Below, piece after piece: positions 34,200-44,277 of a stretch of 64,000 nucleotides of DNA (position 1 is the first letter of the stretch; every line of letters begins with the position of its first letter). Source of the stretch: Epithemia pelagica (Eukaryota > Protista > Bacillariophyta); NCBI GenBank assembly GCA_946965045.2, contig OX337230.1:620001-684000 (forward strand). The letters run 5' to 3'. The translations under genes were made by a program, and so were the position numbers. Under the pieces are notes generated by a model that ran no database searches, was not told the origin of the DNA, and saw only the letters and a list, made by a program, of their open reading frames with translations.

Positions 34200-36137
34200 T
34201 TAAAACAAAACGTCTCCCGATGTTCCATTGTCATCCTCTTCTTCATCGTCCAATGCCATGAGATCATTTTCAATTGCTACCTTTTCGTGATAGAGTTTGG
34301 CCATGCGTGTTTTTGCCTGTTCTGCCATGTTGGTTTCGCGAATCGTTTGAAATCGAGCAATGTTCTTTTCGGCCTCCGACAATTGCTGACTCACCAACTC
34401 CAACTTGCGATCCAACTTTCCTCGCTTGATTTCGGCCGGACTCTTGCGCTTGGCGGCCATGAGAGCCGCCTTATAACGAGACTTTTTCTTCCCACTCGCC
34501 GCCACCTGTTGCTGAAGCTGGTCCTCTTCATCCTCTTCCAAATCGACCAATGCCACAAGTTCTTGCTCAATCTCCACCTTTTTGTTGTACAAGTCCACCA
34601 TTCGTGTCTTGGCTTGCGTGGCCATGTCGATATCGTCAATGCCATGGAAACGAGCAAAGTTCTGTTCCGCGTCCGTCAGCTGACTACTGATACGTTCGAG
34701 CTTACGTTCCAGTTTCGTCCGCTTCTTTTCTTCAGCGTTCCCACCAATGCTTATAGCGGCTGCCGCAAGGCGTTTCCGACTATTGCTAAGCAGACTCTGC
34801 TTTCCTCCTGAATTCTCCAATGCTCCAAGGTTGTCCAGCGCACCCAAAACCTTGCCCAGCGTTTCAGCAAGGTAGGCAGTGTTGTTGTTGCCCGCCGAGA
34901 GTGACGGAGCCTGTTTCTTGGAAGATTTGGGCTTTCCCATTGATTTTCGGGGTGTGCTTGAAGGAAAATGATCTCCCTCTTGAGAGTCCTTGTTCGCTCT
35001 CCACGGAAAGTTGAGCGCATCCAGTTTCTGGACACGTTCACTGGAGACGGGAGACAAGCGCCCTTCTTGCAATTTCTTGCCCAGCCAATACTTTTGATTA
35101 CGAGTCCAGTCATGCAATCGCTTACTGTCCGCGTCTTTTCGATCGGAAACTACCGTGGTTCCATTATCTTGATAGTACTTGGAGAGTCGTTCGTACATGA
35201 TATCCCACTTCATGCTGTTCACCGTTTTGTTTTTCTTGTTCCTTTCGTCCGTATCGTCGTCATTGGTAGTCGGGAATGCGTCGATCGCCGCCGTGGCACC
35301 AAGGGGATGAGAATGAGATGGTTCGTTGGTGGTCGTGATGGCGGAACCAGCCCAATCAAAGCCTATACTTGTAAGCCTCTGGATGCGCTCGACATAAATA
35401 TCCGCCATTTGATCTCCTTCTTCCTCTTTTCGTTTGGCTAGCAAGTAGCGTTGGTTGCGAACCCAATCCGCAAATCTCTTGAATTCCAGATTTCCATCGT
35501 TCTGGTACCGGACACGTGTGTGACCATACTCGTTGCGAAACTCTACCAATCGATTAAAGTACTCATCCCAACTGGCTCGTGCGGCCACGGCATGCTTCTC
35601 CTGACTATCTCTTGTCACACTAAAGCCATCGTCTTTAATGGTTTTAAACATTTGAGACTTCATGGGTGGTTTGAGAGTTTCGGCCATGAGGTTTTGAAGC
35701 AAGGGTTGCAAGGTGCGATAAATCTCAACCGTCTCCTCGAGGCCTCGATTTCGTGGAAAGGATTCCAAGTTACCATCGAGAGGGGTGTCGCAAATGGGAC
35801 AGAGCATGTAACTATTGGTGGAGATTGCTTGCGCCCAGGCGGATGACAAGCAATCACTGCAAAAGTTGTGCTGACAGGGGGAGACGCTCACTGGAGATTG
35901 ATAGAGTCTCTTGCAAATGAAGCAGGTCAGGGATCCTTCCAATTTGGCCAGAGCCGTCAAGGTCTGCTGATATCCGTTGGACATGGGAACACCGACACCG
36001 GGGCCAGGTTGTTGTTGTTGTTGCTGCTGTTGTTGGGGCGCTGCGTTATGATGATGCGTTTGCGATTCCGAAGCCGACGACAGCAAGGACAACCAGCCGC
36101 CGTCCGACACCTTGAAGTCTCCGTTTCCCAAACTCAT
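34200..36137 (-). CDS. RING-HC + two helicase-associated (HA) domains + duplicated C-terminal coiled-coil
   Basis: LTCFICKRLYQSPVSVSPCQHNFCSDC..CPIC; HA1 WDEYFNRLVEFRNEYGHTRV..WVRNQR..RIQRLTSIGFDW; HA2 WDIMYERL..WTRNQK..RVQKLDALNFPW. Confidence 0.85.
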   Translation of the reverse strand: MSLGNGDFKVSDGGWLSLLSSASESQTHHHNAAPQQQQQQQQQPGPGVGVPMSNGYQQTLTALAKLEGSLTCFICKRLYQSPVSVSPCQHNFCSDCLSSAWAQAISTNSYMLCPICDTPLDGNLESFPRNRGLEETVEIYRTLQPLLQNLMAETLKPPMKSQMFKTIKDDGFSVTRDSQEKHAVAARASWDEYFNRLVEFRNEYGHTRVRYQNDGNLEFKRFADWVRNQRYLLAKRKEEEGDQMADIYVERIQRLTSIGFDWAGSAITTTNEPSHSHPLGATAAIDAFPTTNDDDTDERNKKNKTVNSMKWDIMYERLSKYYQDNGTTVVSDRKDADSKRLHDWTRNQKYWLGKKLQEGRLSPVSSERVQKLDALNFPWRANKDSQEGDHFPSSTPRKSMGKPKSSKKQAPSLSAGNNNTAYLAETLGKVLGALDNLGALENSGGKQSLLSNSRKRLAAAAISIGGNAEEKKRTKLERKLERISSQLTDAEQNFARFHGIDDIDMATQAKTRMVDLYNKKVEIEQELVALVDLEEDEEDQLQQQVAASGKKKSRYKAALMAAKRKSPAEIKRGKLDRKLELVSQQLSEAEKNIARFQTIRETNMAEQAKTRMAKLYHEKVAIENDLMALDDEEEDDNGTSGDVLF

Positions 36138-37445
36138 GGTGGTGCTATTACTAATCCAGCGGACCGACTCCACCGCCGCTGCCAATTCCCTATACTATTT
36201 CATAATGAAGCCTTGTGGTGTGAGATGGTGACAAGAAGGATCCATAGAACTCGGAACCACAACCTGCTCCTCTTATCTAATCTATCATGACTTTTGCTTA
36301 CTTACCGCCGACTGATCAGCACAATGAAATGAATTCAGATTCAGCGGGCAAACGTCTGCTTGTTTGTGGAACGGTCGTAGAGTTGAATAGACGGACAGGA
36401 CGCTGCTTCTTTTTTCTGTTTTCGATTTGTGTAGTGCGTATGGTGTGTGTGTGTGGCGTGGGCTTGGAGGCTTGACTGCTGGTTAACCGATCAGATGGGA
36501 TCTTTCAACTGAAAATTCTCTTACTGACATCGGAAGCGCTAGCCACTATACGATAATTAGTACTCTGGAAGAAACGGACTAAGAAGCGTTCTCGTGACGA
36601 AGAGAACTTTTAGCTCAGACACCCAACAAGCGAATCTAAAAAGCACAGTTTCTAGCTTCTATCCTGGTAGGAGTCTCCTATCCATACTATATGGAAGGGA
36701 GATGGGAGTAGCTAGAGAGATAAAATTACAATCGATCTGAATGGACCTAGACACAACCCAATTCAAGTTGATCGTCTGTGAGACAATCTCCGTAAGGCTT
36801 ACAACGTGGTTCGATTTTGTTACAGGGGAACGGACCAAATTGCCGGCACCGTCAACGTTCGAGTGATCCATGGACATGCCTTAGAACTCAATGAAACCTC
36901 CTTTCATTGGACACAAATGACCTCAAAGGAGACAAATTTGCACTGCAAGAACATTCAAGTATACTAGGCCCCTCAGATCAAGCCCATCATCTTTGATGGA
37001 AATCCAATGATTCGGCTTGCATATTTGAGCTGGAGAGGACCTTTAGTCCCAACCCCTACTCGTAAGAGACGTATTGTCTGCTTACGACTGAACCATGCTG
37101 AAACTATTCGCCACTGCCACATTCTTCTCGAAGCGTTGTCTTTTCCAGAGTAGAACGATGCCTTATCTAGCCGCGCTGTGTGAGTTTGGACGGTTCCGCA
37201 GGCGTCACCACCTTGGATTTCTTAGTGCTGCTCCTGACACTTCTGGCTCCTCTTCGTGCTCCCCGAGGGTGGGGAGGTTGTCCTTTTTGTTGCGAGGGTA
37301 CCATGCCTGGTTGCAAAGATGCAGAAGTGGATTGCGCCGGTTGCGAAGCTCCTTTCGGACCTCCAGCACTGCGTTGCTGGGACGGATGAGGATGGTCTTG
37401 TGGTGGTTGTTGCTCTTGCATAGCATACGGAGTACCACCCCGAGC

Positions 37446-37566
37446 AGAACGATGCTTTGTCTTACCCCGACTAGAACGATGCTTTGTCTTAACCCCGACT
37501 AGAACGATGCTTTGTCTTAACCCCGACTAGAACGATGCTTTGTCTTAGTCTTACCCCCAGTAGAAC
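37446..37566. repeat. Minisatellite, ~4 copies of 27-28-bp unit AGAACGATGCTTTGTCTT(A)ACCCCGACT
   Basis: Adjacent near-identical units with no spacers; diverged single copy at ~37152. Confidence 0.95.
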
Positions 37567-39475
37567 AAGTTGGTAGATTCAGTTTGCCTCCTCGCTCCGC
37601 TTCGGCTAGAATAACTGGAAGGACGGCCGCATCCAACGCAGCGTATTCCAGTTGCTCAGCCGAAAGGGGGCGCTTTGTCCAGGACGAGAAACCATCATCT
37701 TCTTTGAATGCTCGGTCTTTGTCGAGCTGCATTTGTTCGTCGGAAAGCAGACTCACAAATTCCGCCAAACCTGGTATAGTTTCATCGTCCTTCCACAACT
37801 CCTGTAAATCCATTACTGGATTTGCTTTGCAGTTCAATTTGGTACCTAATACATTACCGAGTCCTTTTAAATCATTGTGAGGGTTGAATCCGAGGACAAG
37901 TTTCTCTTGAAACATTCGAACCATGAACTGACGACACCTTACTCGAAAGCTCTTGTTCTGAACGGCGACCAACATATCGATAACATAGGTTGATAGTTCT
38001 CGTTTCGAATCATTGCGGAATGCAATTTGGAGAATTGCCGACTGGCCTCGGCTCAAGAATTCAGTGTCAATCGCAACGAGCCTGGGTGTGTTCATAACAT
38101 GATCTTCTGCTTTCTGTAACAACTCCTCCGAGTCGATCAAAATTGGTGGCGTGATAGAAGAAATGAGTTTCTCATTGACTGCGAAATCCTTGGAAAATGT
38201 TAATCCCTGAACCGCATGCAGAGCTTTCTTCCATCTTTTCACACGGTCCTCCATGGACAATTTTCTGGAAAAGGACTCATCCAAGTCGGTGGTTGGAATC
38301 ACCCTACAATTCCAAGGCCGCGGTGGTCCATGCAACCACTTGGTGAATCTATAACGATTCGGCGACGAGATAATGTTGATGTTGGCCAATGGATCTTTGT
38401 TTGCCGACCGCGTTCTTGTGATTCGATATTGTAGCCGGCACAGCCGTACTGCCAACAGTCCTGGATTATCAAGCAGGCTCATACGGAGCTCTTGTTGGTT
38501 ACCAAGGAAGACAGAATCCAAAAGGAGGTCTATCTTTTTAGGAATATCCTTGATTGCCAGCACAAGTGGTAAACGAAATATGATAGATCGAACAGCCTCA
38601 CGATCTCCCTTAAAAACGTCCACCAGGTGGTCGGCCTTGGACCTTAGGTGATGGAAGGAGTGATCGTTCTTATTCATGACAGCATGCCACAATCGTCGAG
38701 GGTCATGTGGAAGGGCTGCCCATGCATGAAACTCGCTTTTGGTCATAAAAAACACATGGTAGTAGAACGCACAGGGATCTTTTCCGGCCTCTATCAGTAC
38801 TTCGGCTCGTTTTCGCAAAGCGGGAAGTCCCTCACGCAAAATACCGACAGATTCACGAAGGAAATCTTTGAGAGCATGTTCTTTGCCTGCAAACACTCTT
38901 TCCCTCAAGTACATGGATCCATCCCACCTGGAATCAAACGACGAAGGCGGAAACCTACGAATGACCGATCCGATGATTTCCCTGTCTCCATAGAAAGATT
39001 TCCGGAAGAACTCCACCCGACTTTCCACTGTCTTGCTTTCACCCCACATCGAGTAATGTTTGCCACCAAAATAACTCAAATACTGCCTCATAAGATAATC
39101 CGATTCAACGCCAAACTCATCACGAATCATTTGTATGGATTTGCGTACATCGGACTCGGTGGAGTTCAAAAGTTCCCAGTCTTTTGTTTCCCATGGCGAA
39201 AGTCCAACCTCACGTTCAAGGAACGATACCATGCGATTTTTAAGGCCTGTGTCCCTTTTAGTGTTGCCATCGAAAACGGACGATGAACTAAAACAACAAC
39301 CTTGTGAACATTGCCATTTTCTCTTGAATCGAGCCAAGGCGATGTTGTTCAAAGAACTTCGTTTTCGCGTCGGTACATCAGCCAGAAGCCACTGATAGAG
39401 AAGCCCCTCAAATATTGAAGAGACCCTATTGTTCCTGGTTCCATTTGCTCTACAGCCGATTCTTGCAGCAATCAT
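37517..39475 (-). CDS. mTERF-like helical repeats fused to a DEDDy 3'-5' exonuclease (Mut-7/EXD3/RNase D-like), paralogue 1
   Basis: Repeats SIIFRLPLVLAIKDIPKKIDLL, LLDNPGLLAVRL; ExoI VAIDTEF, ExoII HNDLK, ExoIII WTKRPLSAEQLEYAALDAAVL. Confidence 0.75.
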   Translation of the reverse strand: MIAARIGCRANGTRNNRVSSIFEGLLYQWLLADVPTRKRSSLNNIALARFKRKWQCSQGCCFSSSSVFDGNTKRDTGLKNRMVSFLEREVGLSPWETKDWELLNSTESDVRKSIQMIRDEFGVESDYLMRQYLSYFGGKHYSMWGESKTVESRVEFFRKSFYGDREIIGSVIRRFPPSSFDSRWDGSMYLRERVFAGKEHALKDFLRESVGILREGLPALRKRAEVLIEAGKDPCAFYYHVFFMTKSEFHAWAALPHDPRRLWHAVMNKNDHSFHHLRSKADHLVDVFKGDREAVRSIIFRLPLVLAIKDIPKKIDLLLDSVFLGNQQELRMSLLDNPGLLAVRLCRLQYRITRTRSANKDPLANINIISSPNRYRFTKWLHGPPRPWNCRVIPTTDLDESFSRKLSMEDRVKRWKKALHAVQGLTFSKDFAVNEKLISSITPPILIDSEELLQKAEDHVMNTPRLVAIDTEFLSRGQSAILQIAFRNDSKRELSTYVIDMLVAVQNKSFRVRCRQFMVRMFQEKLVLGFNPHNDLKGLGNVLGTKLNCKANPVMDLQELWKDDETIPGLAEFVSLLSDEQMQLDKDRAFKEDDGFSSWTKRPLSAEQLEYAALDAAVLPVILAEAERGGKLNLPTCSTGGKTKTKHRSSRG

Positions 39476-39681
39476 AATCCGTCATGGTTGGTTGTTCTGA
39501 ATGAAGATGAATCTTTCTCTTACTTTCTGTATCGCAGACGCACTGACTATAACACCGAGAGTACCACAATGAGCGAAAGAGAACATCACAACAAAATCTG
39601 GTGTGATTGGGCTACTCTCTACTCTGACTACATGCCTATCCAATAAAGGAAATCCTTTCGATAGAGTGGCGGAACGTAGTT

Positions 39682-41931
39682 TTAGATCTTCTTGAGAATA
39701 CCATTAATGGCATCAAAAAGCGACATCAATCTCTTGCGATCCTCAAGTATATAGAGCGTTTTGGGGAAGGAGGTAACCATTTCCACCAGTTCTTCCTCCG
39801 AGATACCAGGAGTACAACGAAGTATGCGCAGTTTTTCTCTCAGTTCTGATCCCGAATCCCTTTGTAACCTAGCCGCCGTTCCCATGATTGCCTTTGCGTC
39901 TGCGATTGTTACACCCAGTTCTTCAACGAGAATATTGTACTTGTCGGGCGTTCCTCCTTGCTCGGACTTCTCCTCCACAATTCCATCCTCCCTGGACTTT
40001 TCTGCCAGTATTACCAACAAGACGGCAGCATCCAAAGCTGCATACTCCAGCTGTGCGCTCGAAAGTGGACGCTTTTCCCACCCATGCGCTTGGGATCCCT
40101 TCCAGAGTTTGCGGCCATCTGACGAATACTTCTGAACACAGGAAGCCAAGCTTGGTTGTTCATTTCCCCACAGTTGCTGAACATCCAGCACATGCTCTGC
40201 ACGAGGTAGGAGATTGCTGCCGAGAACAGAATCTATAGCCTTTAAGTCGTTCCTTACAGCAAAACCCACAACCGTCTTGGCGAGAAACAGCTTCTCGATG
40301 AAGGTCCGACAAACCCTCCGAAAAACTTCATCGTGATCTGCTGCCATCAAATCTACAACAAAGGTCTCAAGTTCATCGCCATTGCGGGGTCTAAAGGAAA
40401 GTTGGAACACTGCCCCGCGATTGTTGCTTCGAAACTCAGTATCCAAAGCAACGAGGTCAGCCGAGGCAAAAACATCCTCCTCAAGAGAGAGCAAGCCTTC
40501 CACGGATTCAACCAATACGGGTGGAGATTTGAGACATATCCTCCCCGAGGAAAGTTCACTGAGACTATCTTTCACCGATAAACCAGAGACGGCGCGACAG
40601 GCATCGCGCCATGGTTCTGAATCAAGGTGTGCCTCATCTGACGCTTTTCCTATCGGGGAAAAGTCGGTGGAGAAGGAGGAAACGTGTCTTGTTGGTGCCA
40701 TCTGCCAAGTTTCGAACTCGTTTTTCTGCAAACGCACAACACAATCTAAACAGAACGACGGTTGTTGGCCTGCCTTCGTAATGGCCATAATGCGGGGCTT
40801 GACGTGATGCCTTAGAGAAAGCGTCAGAAGACGAGGGTACTGCTTGAGCGCGAGACGGAGTTTGATATTATCACCGTCGAAGATATCATTCAAGAGATAA
40901 TCACGTGTGGGTTTCAAGTGACGTTCGACAGATTTCGTGAGGACTGTAGGTACCCGGCGAACTATGGAGCACGATGTCTCTTTGTCTCCCCCAAACAGCT
41001 CGGTCAGAAAGTCGACCCTGTCTTGAAAAGACTCTTCACCGTCAAGTCCTTCAATTGTTACGTCGGGAGAGTCGGCTGACAACGTTTTTGCAAAATTAGC
41101 AATTCTCGGCCACTCTTCAAATGATTCATCCGACATGCTGAAAACATCGAGTAAATCTGACGAAACTTCGAGCCCATTCCTGGCCATTATTTCCACTCTT
41201 TTCTGTAATCGGCTAAATTCCCCAGAAGTACTCCTCAAAATCTTTGGGAACAGAACAATTACCGACCGAAGCATTGCCTGATTTCCTTCCAAACAATGTT
41301 GAGATACATATTCGATGACGTCACGCAAGTCTTTAGTTCGTATGGGTAGACTTTCTAGGATAATCCTTCGAATGGCATCTTTATTCCCACGAAATAACTC
41401 GGTCAAGAAATTAATCATGTCTTCAAATTTGTCGCAAGCGAGAACTTGAGCAAAGGTGGGAAACATTTTTCTTATCTCTTTTGTGGACAAGCCCGACGCT
41501 TCTCGAAGGAACTTCAGGCGCTTCTCTACATTGTCGTTTGTCATTGACACCAATCCTGAACTGTCTAATGAGCCTTCTGTAACAGTTCTGTCCAGTCCGA
41601 TTGTTTGGGTAAGGAAACGAGCCATTTTCTTTCGCTTTTTCACATTTGATGGTGCGGATTTGCTGCCTGTATTCATATTTCTGAAGTACGTCACAGCCCA
41701 ACTATGACAGATCACTGATGTAGTCCGACTTTGACAGAGCCGTGCATAGCGCTCGCATCTTGTTGGAAAACTGCAAAGACAAGCCACATTGCTTAGACCC
41801 CATATCGATCTAAAGTTTCCATTGCGGACAACAGCTGCCATCATCTCCTGAGATCTGAACCAACTCAGGTCGATGTGTGCAAGCGTGCGACGGAGGTTTT
41901 GAGGTGAAACGTCTGTACCTTCGTGCGTCAT
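39682..41931 (-). CDS. mTERF-like repeats + DEDDy 3'-5' exonuclease + short C-terminal mTERF-like repeat, paralogue 2 (start codon uncertain)
   Basis: mTERF-type PTVLTKSVERHLKPTRDYL and YPRLLTLSLRHHVKPR; ExoI VALDTEF, ExoII RNDLK, ExoIII WEKRPLSSAQLEYAALDAAVL. Confidence 0.8.
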   Translation of the reverse strand: MTHEGTDVSPQNLRRTLAHIDLSWFRSQEMMAAVVRNGNFRSIWGLSNVACLCSFPTRCERYARLCQSRTTSVICHSWAVTYFRNMNTGSKSAPSNVKKRKKMARFLTQTIGLDRTVTEGSLDSSGLVSMTNDNVEKRLKFLREASGLSTKEIRKMFPTFAQVLACDKFEDMINFLTELFRGNKDAIRRIILESLPIRTKDLRDVIEYVSQHCLEGNQAMLRSVIVLFPKILRSTSGEFSRLQKRVEIMARNGLEVSSDLLDVFSMSDESFEEWPRIANFAKTLSADSPDVTIEGLDGEESFQDRVDFLTELFGGDKETSCSIVRRVPTVLTKSVERHLKPTRDYLLNDIFDGDNIKLRLALKQYPRLLTLSLRHHVKPRIMAITKAGQQPSFCLDCVVRLQKNEFETWQMAPTRHVSSFSTDFSPIGKASDEAHLDSEPWRDACRAVSGLSVKDSLSELSSGRICLKSPPVLVESVEGLLSLEEDVFASADLVALDTEFRSNNRGAVFQLSFRPRNGDELETFVVDLMAADHDEVFRRVCRTFIEKLFLAKTVVGFAVRNDLKAIDSVLGSNLLPRAEHVLDVQQLWGNEQPSLASCVQKYSSDGRKLWKGSQAHGWEKRPLSSAQLEYAALDAAVLLVILAEKSREDGIVEEKSEQGGTPDKYNILVEELGVTIADAKAIMGTAARLQRDSGSELREKLRILRCTPGISEEELVEMVTSFPKTLYILEDRKRLMSLFDAINGILKKI

Positions 41932-44277
41932 ACATCTCCGGATAGCAGAGGCGTGCGCGGCGAAGTGTCAACCGCAGAGGTGGAGGATGAAACATCATCA
42001 TCATCTTCTTCTTCGCTACGACTGGTGTTTCGGCGCTGCCAAGGAAAGGAAGCACGGCAAATCGCCGTGAATTCGTCGTCCTCGTCGGGTGCGGCATAGG
42101 TTCCGTCATTGGTGCCACGACTGCGCTTCCGACGATCAAAGAAACGATACAATACCAATCCAATCACAATCGCAATGGATCCAGCAAAATCGGACAAACA
42201 AGGCGTTCCTGCCAGCGGCATAAAGGGTAAAAGAAAGGCAGCCGTTCCCACTATGAAAAGACACCGAAAGTGTGAGAGAGTGCAATCATGACACAAGCGT
42301 CGAAGCAACTTTACCCAGACGGCTCCGACCAACTTACAAGGTACCATGAGAGTGACAGCTAGAAAGAAGAGAGTTGTAGAGCCGTACTTGAGACAAAAGA
42401 GCATAAAGTACGAGTATCCCAAACAGGCTACCAAATGTAAATTGACCAACCAAAACGACATGGTTCCACAAAGGGCGTCGGGGTGGCATCCACTCTTGAC
42501 GGAGGGGCTACCAACCATGTAGCATTGCAGTCCGAACCACAAATTCTGTAGCACATGTTCAGGTTGAACTGTGGGCGTCGACACGAGACCACCGAGAAAG
42601 GCCAATGGAATGGAAAAGAACAATTGAAAGACGGCAATCCATCCATTGAGGTATATTGGATAATCTCTTCGAACCGCTTCAGTTCGTTCCATGGCCCATT
42701 CTTTGTATAGCGTAGAAACAATCATCGGAATGCAAGAGGCAATCAAAACAGTAGACCAAACAGAAGCAAGAATCTCCTCTTCTCTGGTTGCTTCTTCAAA
42801 GGGTAACCATTGACATAGACTGCCATCCGGAGTCGAGTCTGAGGGTCTCCATTCCTTCATACTGGGCCACAAAAGCCTTTCCAAGGATGCAGCATTGTTA
42901 TGAGTCTCTTTCATCCAGCCAATACCATTGTTGTCATCATCGTCCGTAGGGTCCGAGATGTGCGAAAGACAATTCTCTTCGTCAAATTCCAGTTTGCAAA
43001 TTGTACAATCATTGTCCACATTAATGGCTTCGCAATAGTAGGCCGGTGATAATCGATTGGCCCAATGGGGTCCCATGAGTACTACAATGCCCAAGGCAAC
43101 AACTGTCGCACCCACGTATTGCGTCCAACGATACGTGGTTTCCGGTTGCTGCTGCCGCCGCCGCCGCTGTCGTCGATTCAAGGAAACGACCAAACTCAGA
43201 GGCACCGCGGCTTGAGGCAGTAGAATGAGTAACGGGCCTGGCAAATAGACAGCGGCGTAGATTTGCATCGTGGTGGCAAGGGAATCCAAGGCGCCCATGA
43301 TCGCCAAGTCACGAACTCGAAGACTCTCTTTTTGCTGTTGTTGTTGTTGCTCATGCGGTGGTGAATCCACAGAGTCATGTTCCTCTCCTTCCGAGGTAGA
43401 AGGCAAATCACTCAACAAGGGAGTCCTCAAATCGTCTCGGTCTCCCTCTTCGTCACAAGCCAAAGGAGTCACTGGAGCTGGGCTTTGGACACTTCTCGTC
43501 CAGTCTGGTGAGCTATCCCTTGCCAACAAGGATGCTCTTGTCTCATCCTCGTCTCTTACGGTGCCATTGTGAGTATCCAACGTCAGATTGTTATCTGCAA
43601 TGCTGTTCTCCTCGTTGTTCTCCTCGTGTTGCTGCGACCCTTTGTTGCAACAGGCTGCTGGGAGAATGTAAGCAAAACAAATGGGAATGTAGATAATGTT
43701 GCAAAACAAGTTCAAAAAGTTTGGGTAATTGAACCTATATCGACCATCCAGGACACCGCCACCAACAACAAGAAAGATTGTAAACATCACAACCGTGGTT
43801 AGGGGTCAGGTTTGTCCAATCTTCACCGGAAAACTGCATTGGACACCATTCAATAACGTACATGGGGATGGCTTGGAGTTTGAGTGTGACGGCATTTAAA
43901 GAGCCAAACACAATCAGTCCCAGAAAGCTCAATAGCACTCGAATATCGCAGACCGACACGGGCTGCGGCCGTGCCGAGGCTTGTGGTTGTCCCGCAGCAC
44001 TCCTGCCGCTGGCGAGTGATAAAGGAGGAGGGCTATCCGAAGTGTCTCCTCGTGCCATGGTCAATGCCGTGGCTGGTGGCTCGGTTTGTACCACCACTTC
44101 GTATTCGAGAGCCGGATGTACTGGAATGTCGGGTTCGTCATGTTCCACCACAACCACCGGCTGCGGCTCTTCCTCCTCCTCCTGGGTAAGACAATCGGTC
44201 AATAGACCATGAAAGGAATGTCGCTCGTCCGAATCTCGACCCTGCAGCAACTGAAAGCCTCGTCGTGGTTCAATCAT
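41928..44277 (-). CDS. CRT-like (chloroquine-resistance-transporter family, DMT superfamily) transporter; introns 43861-43735 and 42337-42251
   Basis: FGSLNAVTLKLQAIP|MFNYPNFLN after splicing; MGALDSLATTMQIYAAVYLPGPLLILLPQAAVPLSL; SCIPMIVSTLYKE; YLNGWIAVFQ. Confidence 0.85.

What the first reader, a model, noticed from the sequence alone, without database searches (positions are those of the whole stretch)
37517..41931. Tandem pair of mTERF-repeat / DEDDy 3'-5' exonuclease fusion proteins
Seen: two adjacent, apparently intronless, strongly diverged paralogues. Each has mTERF-type helical repeats and an exonuclease with all four acidic residues plus Tyr intact (DTE / D / YAALD). The N-termini are R/S-rich and acid-poor, like transit peptides. 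Known: mTERFs bind organellar DNA/RNA in transcription termination, fork barriers, splicing and ribosome assembly, and normally have no catalytic domain; Mut-7/EXD3/RNase D-type domains trim RNA 3' ends. Inference: sequence-guided organellar nucleases that couple target recognition to 3' trimming of rRNA or mRNA ends. I do not know of a described mTERF-exonuclease fusion.
Basis: partly seen in the sequence, partly recalled or inferred. Interest (0 to 1): 0.8.

Follow-up and report, generated by a model that had tools for sequence, protein, structure and literature searches.

The report
Diatom mTERF–exonuclease fusion gene pair
Two neighbouring diatom genes each join an mTERF nucleic-acid-binding repeat domain to an intact 3'-5' exonuclease, a combination I found in only a few diatom assemblies and in no paper; one copy looks expressed and the other is broken in a sister haplotype.

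Summary
Two intronless minus-strand ORFs sit at exactly the stated coordinates: g1 (37517-39475, 652 aa) and g2 (39682-41931, 749 aa, probable start at Met30). They are about 29% identical across both domains.

- **Domains.** g2 passes Pfam thresholds for mTERF and for the 3'-5' exonuclease. g1 passes only the exonuclease threshold, but profile comparison (98.4%) and a predicted structure show a diverged mTERF domain.
- **Structure.** Both models (pLDDT about 82) match human MTERF1 and the Nibbler, WRN and RNase D exonuclease folds. All DEDDy residues are present in both.
- **Distribution.** A search of 1.84 billion cluster representatives found the fusion in five clusters only, all traceable to diatom or diatom-like assemblies (Epithemia clementina is the only named one). 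The exonuclease parts form one clan, next to diatom ankyrin-exonuclease proteins.
- **Literature.** No paper searched describes the fusion.

Caveats:
- g1 carries two nonsense mutations in a sister haplotype and has about 1% of g2's depth in an RNA-like run.
- A related double gene in another diatom is likewise broken in one haplotype.
- Organellar (probably mitochondrial) import and RNA 3' trimming are inferred, not shown.

Verdict: a real new domain architecture, a variant of the known repeat-plus-nuclease theme, of moderate interest.

The parts
39682..41931 (-). g2: longest ORF (749 aa) of the upstream mTERF-exonuclease gene. The probable true start is Met30 at 41844.
   Evidence: ORF list. 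Pfam mTERF 1.2e-16 and exonuclease 2.7e-13. The sister allele's model starts at Met31. Depth is about 760 in the RNA-like run X4.
41650..41844 (-). g2 leader (aa 30-94): basic, acid-poor and disordered; a presumed import presequence.
   Evidence: 10 R/K against 1 D/E in the first 70 residues; best 12-residue hydrophobicity only 1.39. pLDDT is below 50. 35 of the 41 codon differences between the two alleles fall in codons 33-128.
40690..41652 (-). g2 mTERF solenoid (about aa 94-414).
   Evidence: Pfam PF02536, 3 stretches. The model aligns to human MTERF1 residues 85-396 with Z 15.4 over 287-290 residues. Foldseek prob 1.00, TMt 0.51-0.56.
39982..40611 (-). g2 DEDDy 3'-5' exonuclease domain (about aa 441-650). 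ExoI D497/E499 at 40432-40446, ExoII D562 at 40234-40254, ExoIII Y630/D634 at 40027-40044.
   Evidence: Pfam PF01612. Nibbler EXO Z 18.4, rmsd 2.4 over 180 aa; WRN exonuclease Z 17; RNase D Z 16.5. Motif positions.
39685..39945 (-). g2 C-terminal helical tail (aa 663-749): one or two extra mTERF-like motifs after the exonuclease.
   Evidence: Weak Pfam mTERF hit, E 0.012. It matches mTERF-only proteins by phmmer. It is homologous to the tail of P0151 and to the start of P0151's second mTERF module. Helices at model residues 634-719.
37517..39475 (-). g1: the downstream paralogue (652 aa). It is intact here and broken in the sister haplotype.
   Evidence: ORF list. 29% identity to g2. The L001 allele has K79* and R351* plus 5 missense and 1 synonymous change. 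Depth is 0-8.5 in run X4.
38330..39262 (-). g1 diverged mTERF domain (about aa 72-382).
   Evidence: No Pfam hit at E<=1. hhalign to an mTERF profile gives 98.4%, E 6e-15. phmmer with g2's mTERF part gives 7.8e-12. Foldseek to MTERF1 gives E 1.3e-3.
37586..38254 (-). g1 DEDDy exonuclease domain (about aa 408-630). D470/E472 at 38057-38071, D535 at 37859-37879, Y611/D615 at 37628-37645.
   Evidence: Pfam PF01612, 31.4 bits. Nibbler EXO Z 18.9, rmsd 2.6 over 184 aa. Motifs.

Best explanation
g2 and g1 belong to a small family found only in a few diatom assemblies. In this family a full mTERF solenoid (an organellar nucleic-acid-binding repeat domain) is joined by a short flexible linker to a catalytically complete DEDDy 3'-5' exonuclease of the Nibbler/Mut-7/RNase D class.

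Shown here:
- the architecture, the folds and the catalytic motifs;
- a single origin of the fusion, next to diatom ankyrin-exonuclease proteins;
- an old g1/g2 duplication at a conserved locus beside a CRT-like transporter gene;
- deep, uninterrupted coverage of g2 in an RNA-like run.

Inferred mechanism:
- The basic, acid-poor, disordered leader takes the protein into an organelle. A mitochondrion is most likely, because no signal-peptide-like hydrophobic core is present.
- The mTERF groove holds an organellar RNA, or a ribonucleoprotein or DNA site.
- The tethered exonuclease trims or degrades the 3' end by two-metal hydrolysis, so binding and trimming are coupled in one chain.

g2 is probably the working copy in this species. 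g1 is dispensable or being lost.
For: - **Architecture.** Pfam hits for both domains and hhalign for g1's mTERF part.
- **Folds.** AlphaFold models have pLDDT 82.7 and 82.4. They match MTERF1 at Z 15.4 over about 290 residues and Nibbler EXO at Z 18-19, then WRN, Rrp6, RNase D and the mitochondrial T. brucei RNase D.
- **Catalytic residues.** DEDDy is complete in g1, g2, P0003, P0004, P0005 and the second unit of P0151.
- **Rarity.** The exhaustive search gave 444 hits. Among the best 150, both parts occur only in P0001-P0004, with a weak mTERF match in P0005.
- **One origin.** The seven fusion exonuclease domains form one clan (99/97). g1 pairs with the syntenic Epithemia ORF (100/99).
- **One gene.** Contig X4/29 runs without a joint from 39771 to 41549 at depth 760, while spacers are near 0. 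P0003 sits on an ORF-sized 2,073-nt contig.
- **Leaders.** All seven members have 6-10 R/K and 1-3 D/E in the first 50 residues.
- **Precedent.** The review PMC9181182 describes a mitochondrial RNase D whose N-terminal zinc-finger RNA-binding domain feeds the catalytic site.
Against: - No localisation predictor or experiment was available. The leader reading rests on composition and low hydrophobicity only.
- The kind of run X4 is not on record. Contigs cannot show transcript ends, and the deep contig stops 89 nt before the g2 stop codon.
- Nothing here tells RNA from DNA as substrate. WRN and Pol I exonucleases score nearly as well as the RNA enzymes, and the mTERF part matches DNA-bound MTERF1.
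- One haplotype carries multiply broken alleles in both species examined. The first exonuclease of P0151 has lost two catalytic residues. Both suggest weak constraint.
- pTM of 0.59-0.63 gives no reliable relative placement of the two domains.
Confidence: 0.55

Rival explanations
1. The fusion works on organellar DNA, not RNA. The mTERF part binds double-stranded mitochondrial or plastid DNA as MTERF1 does. The exonuclease then resects or proofreads 3' DNA ends at replication pause, termination or break sites.
For: - The g2 solenoid aligns over its whole length with DNA-bound human MTERF1.
- WRN exonuclease and Pol I proofreading domains score Z 15-17, close to the RNA enzymes.
Against: - The best sequence and structure matches are RNA-trimming enzymes: Nibbler is the only PDB sequence hit, followed by Rrp6 and RNase D.
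- mTERF proteins are also reported in RNA splicing and transcript stability, although direct RNA binding is still debated (PMC13126933).
Confidence: 0.2
2. The proteins are not organellar. They keep the unknown, possibly nuclear or cytosolic, RNA-trimming role of the parental diatom ankyrin-exonuclease family, with mTERF repeats replacing ankyrin repeats as a scaffold.
For: - The nearest exonuclease relatives are diatom ankyrin-exonuclease proteins, including Phaeodactylum XP_002178891.1.
- From my own knowledge, not tested here: Nibbler and Mut-7 act on small RNAs outside organelles.
- No targeting predictor was run.
Against: - All seven fusion members carry a basic, acid-poor N-terminal extension ahead of the first mTERF helix, and it is disordered in both models.
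- By established knowledge, characterised mTERF proteins are mitochondrial or plastidial.
Confidence: 0.15
3. The pair is evolutionary debris of a lineage-specific domain shuffle. g1 in particular is a polymorphic pseudogene and the family has little or no function.
For: - The g1 allele in L001 has 2 nonsense, 5 missense and only 1 synonymous change. Nonsense variants appear in contigs from two of three samples.
- g1's depth is about 1% of g2's in run X4.
- The L005 allele of the double gene has two stops and a frameshift.
- The first exonuclease of P0151 has lost its ExoI Glu and ExoII Asp.
- The Epithemia locus has no g2-type copy.
Against: - Long intact ORFs with complete catalytic motifs have persisted across species whose neighbouring genes are only 52-61% identical.
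- g1's lineage keeps an intact 659-aa ORF in Epithemia clementina.
- g2 is intact in both haplotypes, with few changes in its domains (3 nonsynonymous, 3 synonymous), and is deeply covered in the RNA-like run.
Confidence: 0.1

Closest known systems
mTERF family (human MTERF1-4; plant and algal mTERFs; Pfam PF02536)
   Same: The N-terminal half has the same helical-repeat solenoid. g2's model aligns with MTERF1 residues 85-396 (Z 15.4), and g2 passes the Pfam threshold. An N-terminal presequence-like leader is present.
   Different: Described mTERFs carry no catalytic domain; that is my own knowledge, and the papers searched gave no counter-example. Here a DEDDy exonuclease follows the solenoid, and in g2 one or two more mTERF-like motifs follow the exonuclease. 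g1's repeats are too diverged for the Pfam model.
Nibbler / Mut-7 / EXD3-type DEDDy exonucleases (PDB 7jw2, 7jw6), with WRN exonuclease, Rrp6 and RNase D
   Same: Same fold (Z 18-19, rmsd 2.4-2.8 over about 180 residues). Same ExoI, ExoII and ExoIII motifs with Tyr. Nibbler is the only PDB hit by sequence.
   Different: Identity is only 22-28%, and sequence E-values are 1e-4 to 2e-3. The flanking domains of those proteins are absent. This is a resemblance, not orthology.
Diatom ankyrin-repeat plus 3'-5' exonuclease proteins (for example Phaeodactylum tricornutum XP_002178891.1 / B7FVA3; uncharacterised)
   Same: They are the closest exonuclease relatives (33-44% identity). They share the conserved extension ahead of the exonuclease and the C-terminal position of the domain. 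The 952-aa ankyrin proteins P0029 and P0041 are sister to the fusion clan (94/87).
   Different: Their N-terminal repeats are ankyrin, not mTERF. g1 and g2 show no ankyrin match.
Trypanosoma brucei mitochondrial RNase D (TbRND; PDB 7c42-7c45; reviewed in PMC9181182)
   Same: It is a mitochondrial DEDDy RNase D-class enzyme whose N-terminal RNA-binding module feeds the 3' end into the catalytic site. Structural match Z 15.4-17.4.
   Different: Its binding module is CCHC zinc fingers, not mTERF. It comes from a different lineage and arose independently.
Organellar helical-repeat plus nuclease fusions (PRORP, PPR-SMR, OPR/HPR-RAP) and the engineered MTERF1-FokI nuclease (PMC10692114)
   Same: The design is the same: an alpha-solenoid that binds nucleic acid joined to a nuclease in one chain. 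MTERF1-FokI shows that an mTERF can direct a fused nuclease to mitochondrial DNA.
   Different: The natural examples use PPR, OPR or HPR repeats with endonuclease domains. The mTERF example is man-made and carries an endonuclease. Here the fusion is natural and carries an exonuclease.

Membership tests
mTERF (PF02536) | Match to the family HMM above Pfam's gathering score | tested here: met
   g2 scores 61 bits against a cut-off of 23.1. g1 gives no hit at E<=1, so this feature is met for g2 only.
mTERF (PF02536) | Homology of g1's N-terminal half to mTERF repeats | tested here: met
   hhalign of a g1 plus Epithemia-orthologue profile against a 12-protein mTERF profile gives 98.4%, E 6.3e-15 over 248 columns. 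phmmer with g2's mTERF part hits g1 at 7.8e-12. The Epithemia orthologue gives a weak Pfam hit of 17.7 bits.
mTERF (PF02536) | Solenoid fold of repeated short helices, as in MTERF1 and MTERF3 | tested here: met
   g2: MTERF1 Z 15.4, 287-290 aligned, model residues 52-385 against chain 85-396; MTERF3 also matched. g1: Foldseek MTERF1 E 1.3e-3, prob 1.00, but TMt only 0.35-0.37.
mTERF (PF02536) | Import into mitochondria or plastids, and nucleic-acid binding | not testable with these tools
   Only composition was examined: basic, acid-poor, disordered leaders without a hydrophobic core.
DEDDy 3'-5' exonuclease (PF01612, DnaQ-like superfamily) | Match to the family HMM above the gathering score | tested here: met
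   g2 scores 50.5 bits and g1 31.4 bits against a cut-off of 23.6.
DEDDy 3'-5' exonuclease (PF01612, DnaQ-like superfamily) | ExoI D-x-E, ExoII D and ExoIII Y-x3-D residues present | tested here: met
   g2 has D497/E499, D562 and Y630/D634. g1 has D470/E472, D535 and Y611/D615. The first unit of P0151 lacks the ExoI Glu and the ExoII Asp.
DEDDy 3'-5' exonuclease (PF01612, DnaQ-like superfamily) | Exonuclease fold | tested here: met
   Nibbler EXO Z 18.4 (g2) and 18.9 (g1); WRN about 17; RNase D 16.5.
DEDDy 3'-5' exonuclease (PF01612, DnaQ-like superfamily) | Metal-dependent 3'-5' hydrolysis | not testable with these tools
   This needs an enzyme assay.
Mut-7 / Nibbler / EXD3 subfamily | Orthology: closest sequence kinship and shared accessory domains | tested here: inconclusive
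   Nibbler is the only PDB sequence hit, but it is weak (E 1.4e-4 and 2.1e-3). No accessory domain of that subfamily was detected. No tree with bona fide Mut-7 proteins was built.
Diatom ankyrin-exonuclease family | N-terminal ankyrin repeats | tested here: not met
   Neither g1 nor g2 gives an Ank hit, whereas P0006, P0009, P0011, P0013, P0016, P0021, P0029, P0041 and P0170 do.

The most novel reading that the evidence does not exclude
This is a natural, self-guided organellar nuclease. The mTERF solenoid recognises particular mitochondrial (or plastid) RNA or DNA sites and its own tethered exonuclease sets or destroys the adjacent 3' ends. That would be the first catalytic mTERF and an exonuclease counterpart of PRORP or PPR-SMR. 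Duplicated units, such as the dead-plus-active pair in P0151 or g2 plus g1, might work as a pseudo-dimer.
Probability: 0.25. Interest if true: 0.75.

Novelty: new variant of a known kind. Interest (0 to 1): 0.55.

Why it matters
mTERF proteins are regarded as non-catalytic adaptors, and how they act on organellar RNA is still debated. A natural mTERF joined to an active-looking exonuclease would give a direct handle on what an mTERF binds, because the nuclease leaves a readable mark at 3' ends. It would also add a new type to the repeat-plus-nuclease enzymes of organelles. Gene expression in diatom mitochondria and plastids is hardly explored, so a lineage-specific enzyme there is a useful entry point. 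The narrow distribution and the broken alleles limit its general importance.

Tried and rejected
- **Word-index protein search.** With g2 and with the family alignment it returned only the sister allele. It missed even P0002-P0005, so it says nothing about absence.
- **Metagenome scan.** Using family patterns it gave 80 loci, all matching only exonuclease residues 438-635. None was a fusion.
- **ESM Atlas feature search.** It returned only exonuclease-only clusters, with scores of 0.80 or less.
- **Literature.** Searches for mTERF with exonuclease, fusion, diatom, Nibbler, domain architecture, or the two Pfam accessions found no description. Two reviews were checked.
- **g2 and g1 spliced into one transcript (as the single ORF of P0151 suggests).** Rejected. 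No joints were found, spacer depth is near zero, and depth differs about 100-fold.
- **Diatom plastid-type leader.** The conserved S-F-P at g2 residues 54-56 could look like a signal-peptide cleavage motif. I judged this unlikely. The preceding stretch is weakly hydrophobic (1.39) and even less so in the sister allele. No predictor was available.
- **Domain packing.** Model coordinates are not exposed, so I could not test whether g2's C-terminal helices pack onto the N-terminal solenoid or how the active site faces the groove.
- **Organism.** The species was not identified. Neighbouring genes are only 54-61% identical to Epithemia clementina.

Full report
**1. What is in the sequence**

The window has two long minus-strand ORFs at exactly the reported coordinates: g1 at 37517-39475 (652 aa) and g2 at 39682-41931 (749 aa). 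They are 206 nt apart. G+C is about 46-48% here, as in the rest of the window. BLASTP aligns the two proteins over 581 residues at 29% identity, E 5e-62, covering both halves. No further copy lies in the window.

Pfam gives mTERF (PF02536, 61 bits, cut-off 23.1, three stretches) and the 3'-5' exonuclease (PF01612, 50.5 bits) for g2. For g1 it gives PF01612 only (31.4 bits).

g1's N-terminal half gives no Pfam match even at E<=1, but three results show it is a diverged mTERF domain:
- phmmer with g2's mTERF part hits it at 7.8e-12.
- A profile of g1 plus its Epithemia orthologue matches a profile of twelve mTERF-only proteins at 98.4% probability, E 6.3e-15, over 248 columns.
- The Epithemia orthologue itself gives a weak Pfam mTERF hit of 17.7 bits.

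**2. Structure**

AlphaFold2 models built on 63-64-row alignments reach a mean pLDDT of 82.7 for g2 (from Met30, pTM 0.63) and 82.4 for g1 (pTM 0.59). Both show the same layout:
- a disordered leader of about 60-70 residues;
- a run of about 25 short helices;
- a disordered linker of about 15 residues;
- an alpha/beta domain.

g2 adds six more helices at its C-terminus.

The helical part of g2 aligns with nearly the whole of human MTERF1. Model residues 52-385 match chain residues 85-396 with Z 15.4, 287-290 residues aligned and rmsd about 7 Å, which is expected for solenoids of different curvature. Foldseek agrees, with prob 1.00 and TMt 0.51-0.56, and also finds MTERF3. g1's helical part matches MTERF1 more weakly (E 1.3e-3, prob 1.00, TMt 0.35-0.37).

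The alpha/beta domains match these exonuclease structures:

| Structure | Z |
|---|---|
| Nibbler EXO | 18.4 (g2), 18.9 (g1); rmsd 2.4-2.6 over 180-184 residues |
| WRN exonuclease | about 17 |
| RNase D | 16.5 |
| Rrp6 | 16-17.5 |
| mitochondrial T. brucei RNase D | 15.4-17.4 |
| Pol I proofreading domains | about 15-17 |

By sequence, Nibbler ("exonuclease mut-7 homolog") is the only solved relative.

**3. Catalytic residues**

The three motifs are intact in both proteins.
- g2 has LDTEF (D497, E499), RNDL (D562) and YAALD (Y630, D634).
- g1 has IDTEF (D470, E472), HNDL (D535) and YAALD (Y611, D615).

The same columns are conserved in the consensus of 38 exonuclease relatives.

**4. Start codon and leader**

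A 97.9%-identical copy of this locus was found on a 1.6-Mb contig of another assembly (L001). It is a sister haplotype or a close strain. That copy has indels within the first 100 nt of the g2 ORF, and its ORF and gene model begin at the Met30/Met31 pair. The likely start of g2 is therefore window 41844.

From there the first 70 residues hold 10 R/K, 1 D/E and 14 S/T. The most hydrophobic 12-residue stretch scores only 1.39 on the Kyte-Doolittle scale. All seven family members have the same kind of N-terminus, with 6-10 R/K and 1-3 D/E in the first 50 residues.

This composition fits a mitochondrial-type presequence better than the signal-peptide-led plastid leader of diatoms. It is composition only; no predictor or experiment was available.

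**5. Is it one gene, and is it expressed?**

Four public runs hold the stretch, and none has its kind on record. Three are flat at about 100-200 across the region and include contigs of up to 509 kb, so they look like genomic DNA.

The fourth, X4, looks like RNA. Its depth is about 760 over g2 (39771-41936), 0-8.5 over g1 and close to 0 in the spacers. In X4 one 1,779-nt contig runs without a joint from 39771 to 41549. That span covers g2 residues 128-720, which is most of the solenoid, the linker and the whole exonuclease.

No joints were reported in any run. In another organism the fusion protein P0003 sits on an ORF-sized 2,073-nt contig.

These are contigs, not reads, so transcript ends and strand are not shown. 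The X4 contig stops 89 nt before the g2 stop codon and I cannot explain this. The frame beyond that point is conserved in a relative.

**6. Relatives**

The exhaustive profile search of 1.84 billion cluster representatives gave 444 hits. I re-scanned the best 150 with g2's two halves separately and with Pfam. Both domains occur together only in these:
- the sister allele, P0001;
- P0002 and P0151, from another assembly;
- P0003;
- two proteins of Epithemia clementina, P0004 and P0005 (P0005's mTERF match is weak, E 1.2e-3).

P0004 is a truncated gene model. The real ORF is 659 aa (L003 7335-9311) and is 40.6% identical to g1. It lies in the same gene order, between the CRT-like transporter gene and the RING-finger gene.

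P0151 is a single 1,333-aa ORF with the order mTERF, exonuclease, mTERF, exonuclease, tail. It also lies just downstream of a CRT-like gene. Its first exonuclease has lost the ExoI Glu (DAKF) and the ExoII Asp (HVVEG).

The metagenome scan and the Atlas search found exonuclease-only relatives and no fusion.

The nearest non-fusion relatives of the exonuclease are diatom proteins with N-terminal ankyrin repeats. One of them is Phaeodactylum XP_002178891.1.

In a maximum-likelihood tree of exonuclease domains:
- the seven fusion domains form one clan (99/97);
- g1 groups with the Epithemia syntenic ORF (100/99);
- g2 groups with both units of P0151 (90/89);
- two 952-aa ankyrin proteins are sister to the fusion clan (94/87).

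The fusion therefore arose once, probably from an ankyrin-exonuclease lineage. The g1/g2 duplication is older than the split from Epithemia, and the P0151 duplication is separate.

Neighbouring genes are 52-61% identical between these species, while the fusion proteins are 38-41% identical. The family evolves faster than its neighbours.

**7. Signs of weak constraint**

In L001 the g1 allele differs at 8 positions. Two are nonsense (K79*, R351*), five are missense and one is synonymous. The nonsense variants also appear in contigs from two of the three samples, and the low-depth g1 contig of the RNA-like run carries R351*.

g2 is intact in both alleles. Codons 129-749 differ at six codons (3 nonsynonymous, 3 synonymous), while codons 33-128 differ at 35. 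The CRT-like gene further upstream is also relatively diverged (96.5% aa identity), so the divergent block probably extends upstream of g2.

In the other diatom, the second haplotype (L005) of the 1,333-aa gene has two stops and a 1-bp deletion.

No genome-wide baseline was available, so I cannot say whether such broken alleles are unusual in these diploid genomes.

**8. Mechanism and comparison**

The architecture is shown. The function is inferred from the families.

mTERF solenoids bind DNA or RNA along their groove. DEDDy domains remove 3' nucleotides by two-metal hydrolysis. Joined by a flexible linker, the two should couple binding to 3' trimming or degradation.

RNA is somewhat more likely as substrate, because the best matches are RNA enzymes. 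DNA is not excluded.

The closest working analogue in the literature read is the mitochondrial RNase D of trypanosomes, whose N-terminal zinc fingers feed RNA to the catalytic site (PMC9181182). Helical repeats joined to RAP nucleases are described in the same review. An engineered MTERF1-FokI nuclease has been used on mitochondrial DNA (abstract of PMC10692114).

No paper searched describes a natural mTERF-exonuclease fusion. Subscription journals and domain-architecture databases were not searchable.

**9. Verdict**

This is a new domain architecture built from two well-known domains, along a known design principle. It is confined to a few diatom assemblies, and one copy in this species is decaying. 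I rate it a new variant of a known kind, with interest 0.55.

Noticed in passing
window 41928-43790 (-), with L001, L002, L003 and L005: A CRT-like transporter gene (PF08627) lies directly upstream of the fusion gene in all assemblies examined. Its stop codon overlaps the first, probably unused, ATG of the g2 ORF.
   Followed up: partly
window 34200-36185 (-): A 661-aa protein with a RING finger, a polyglutamine run, HA (helicase-associated) repeats and duplicated C-terminal coiled-coil segments. It is syntenic with Epithemia clementina (54% identity).
   Followed up: no
window 41545-41844 (g2 codons 33-128) compared with L001: The two haplotypes differ at 35 of 96 codons here but at only 6 of 621 codons in the rest of g2, so a boundary between high- and low-divergence haplotype blocks lies inside the gene.
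   Followed up: partly
L002 8001-12002 and L005 6001-9788: Another diatom carries a single 1,333-aa ORF with two mTERF-exonuclease units. The first exonuclease has lost two catalytic residues. The second haplotype has two stops and a 1-bp deletion.
   Followed up: partly
window 39606-39771: In the RNA-like run X4 the deep contig over g2 ends at 39771, 89 nt before the stop codon. Nothing is laid down to 39606, and there is no joint or loose end.
   Followed up: partly
L003 7335-9314: The NCBI model KAL7571395.1 of Epithemia clementina (437 aa) looks N-terminally truncated. The ORF is 659 aa and includes the leader and the mTERF-like half.
   Followed up: yes
P0170, P0021, P0006, P0009, P0011, P0013, P0016, P0029, P0041: There is a widespread, uncharacterised diatom family joining ankyrin repeats to a C-terminal DEDDy exonuclease. 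One member also shows a weak, below-threshold Pfam match to a Tudor-like domain.
   Followed up: partly
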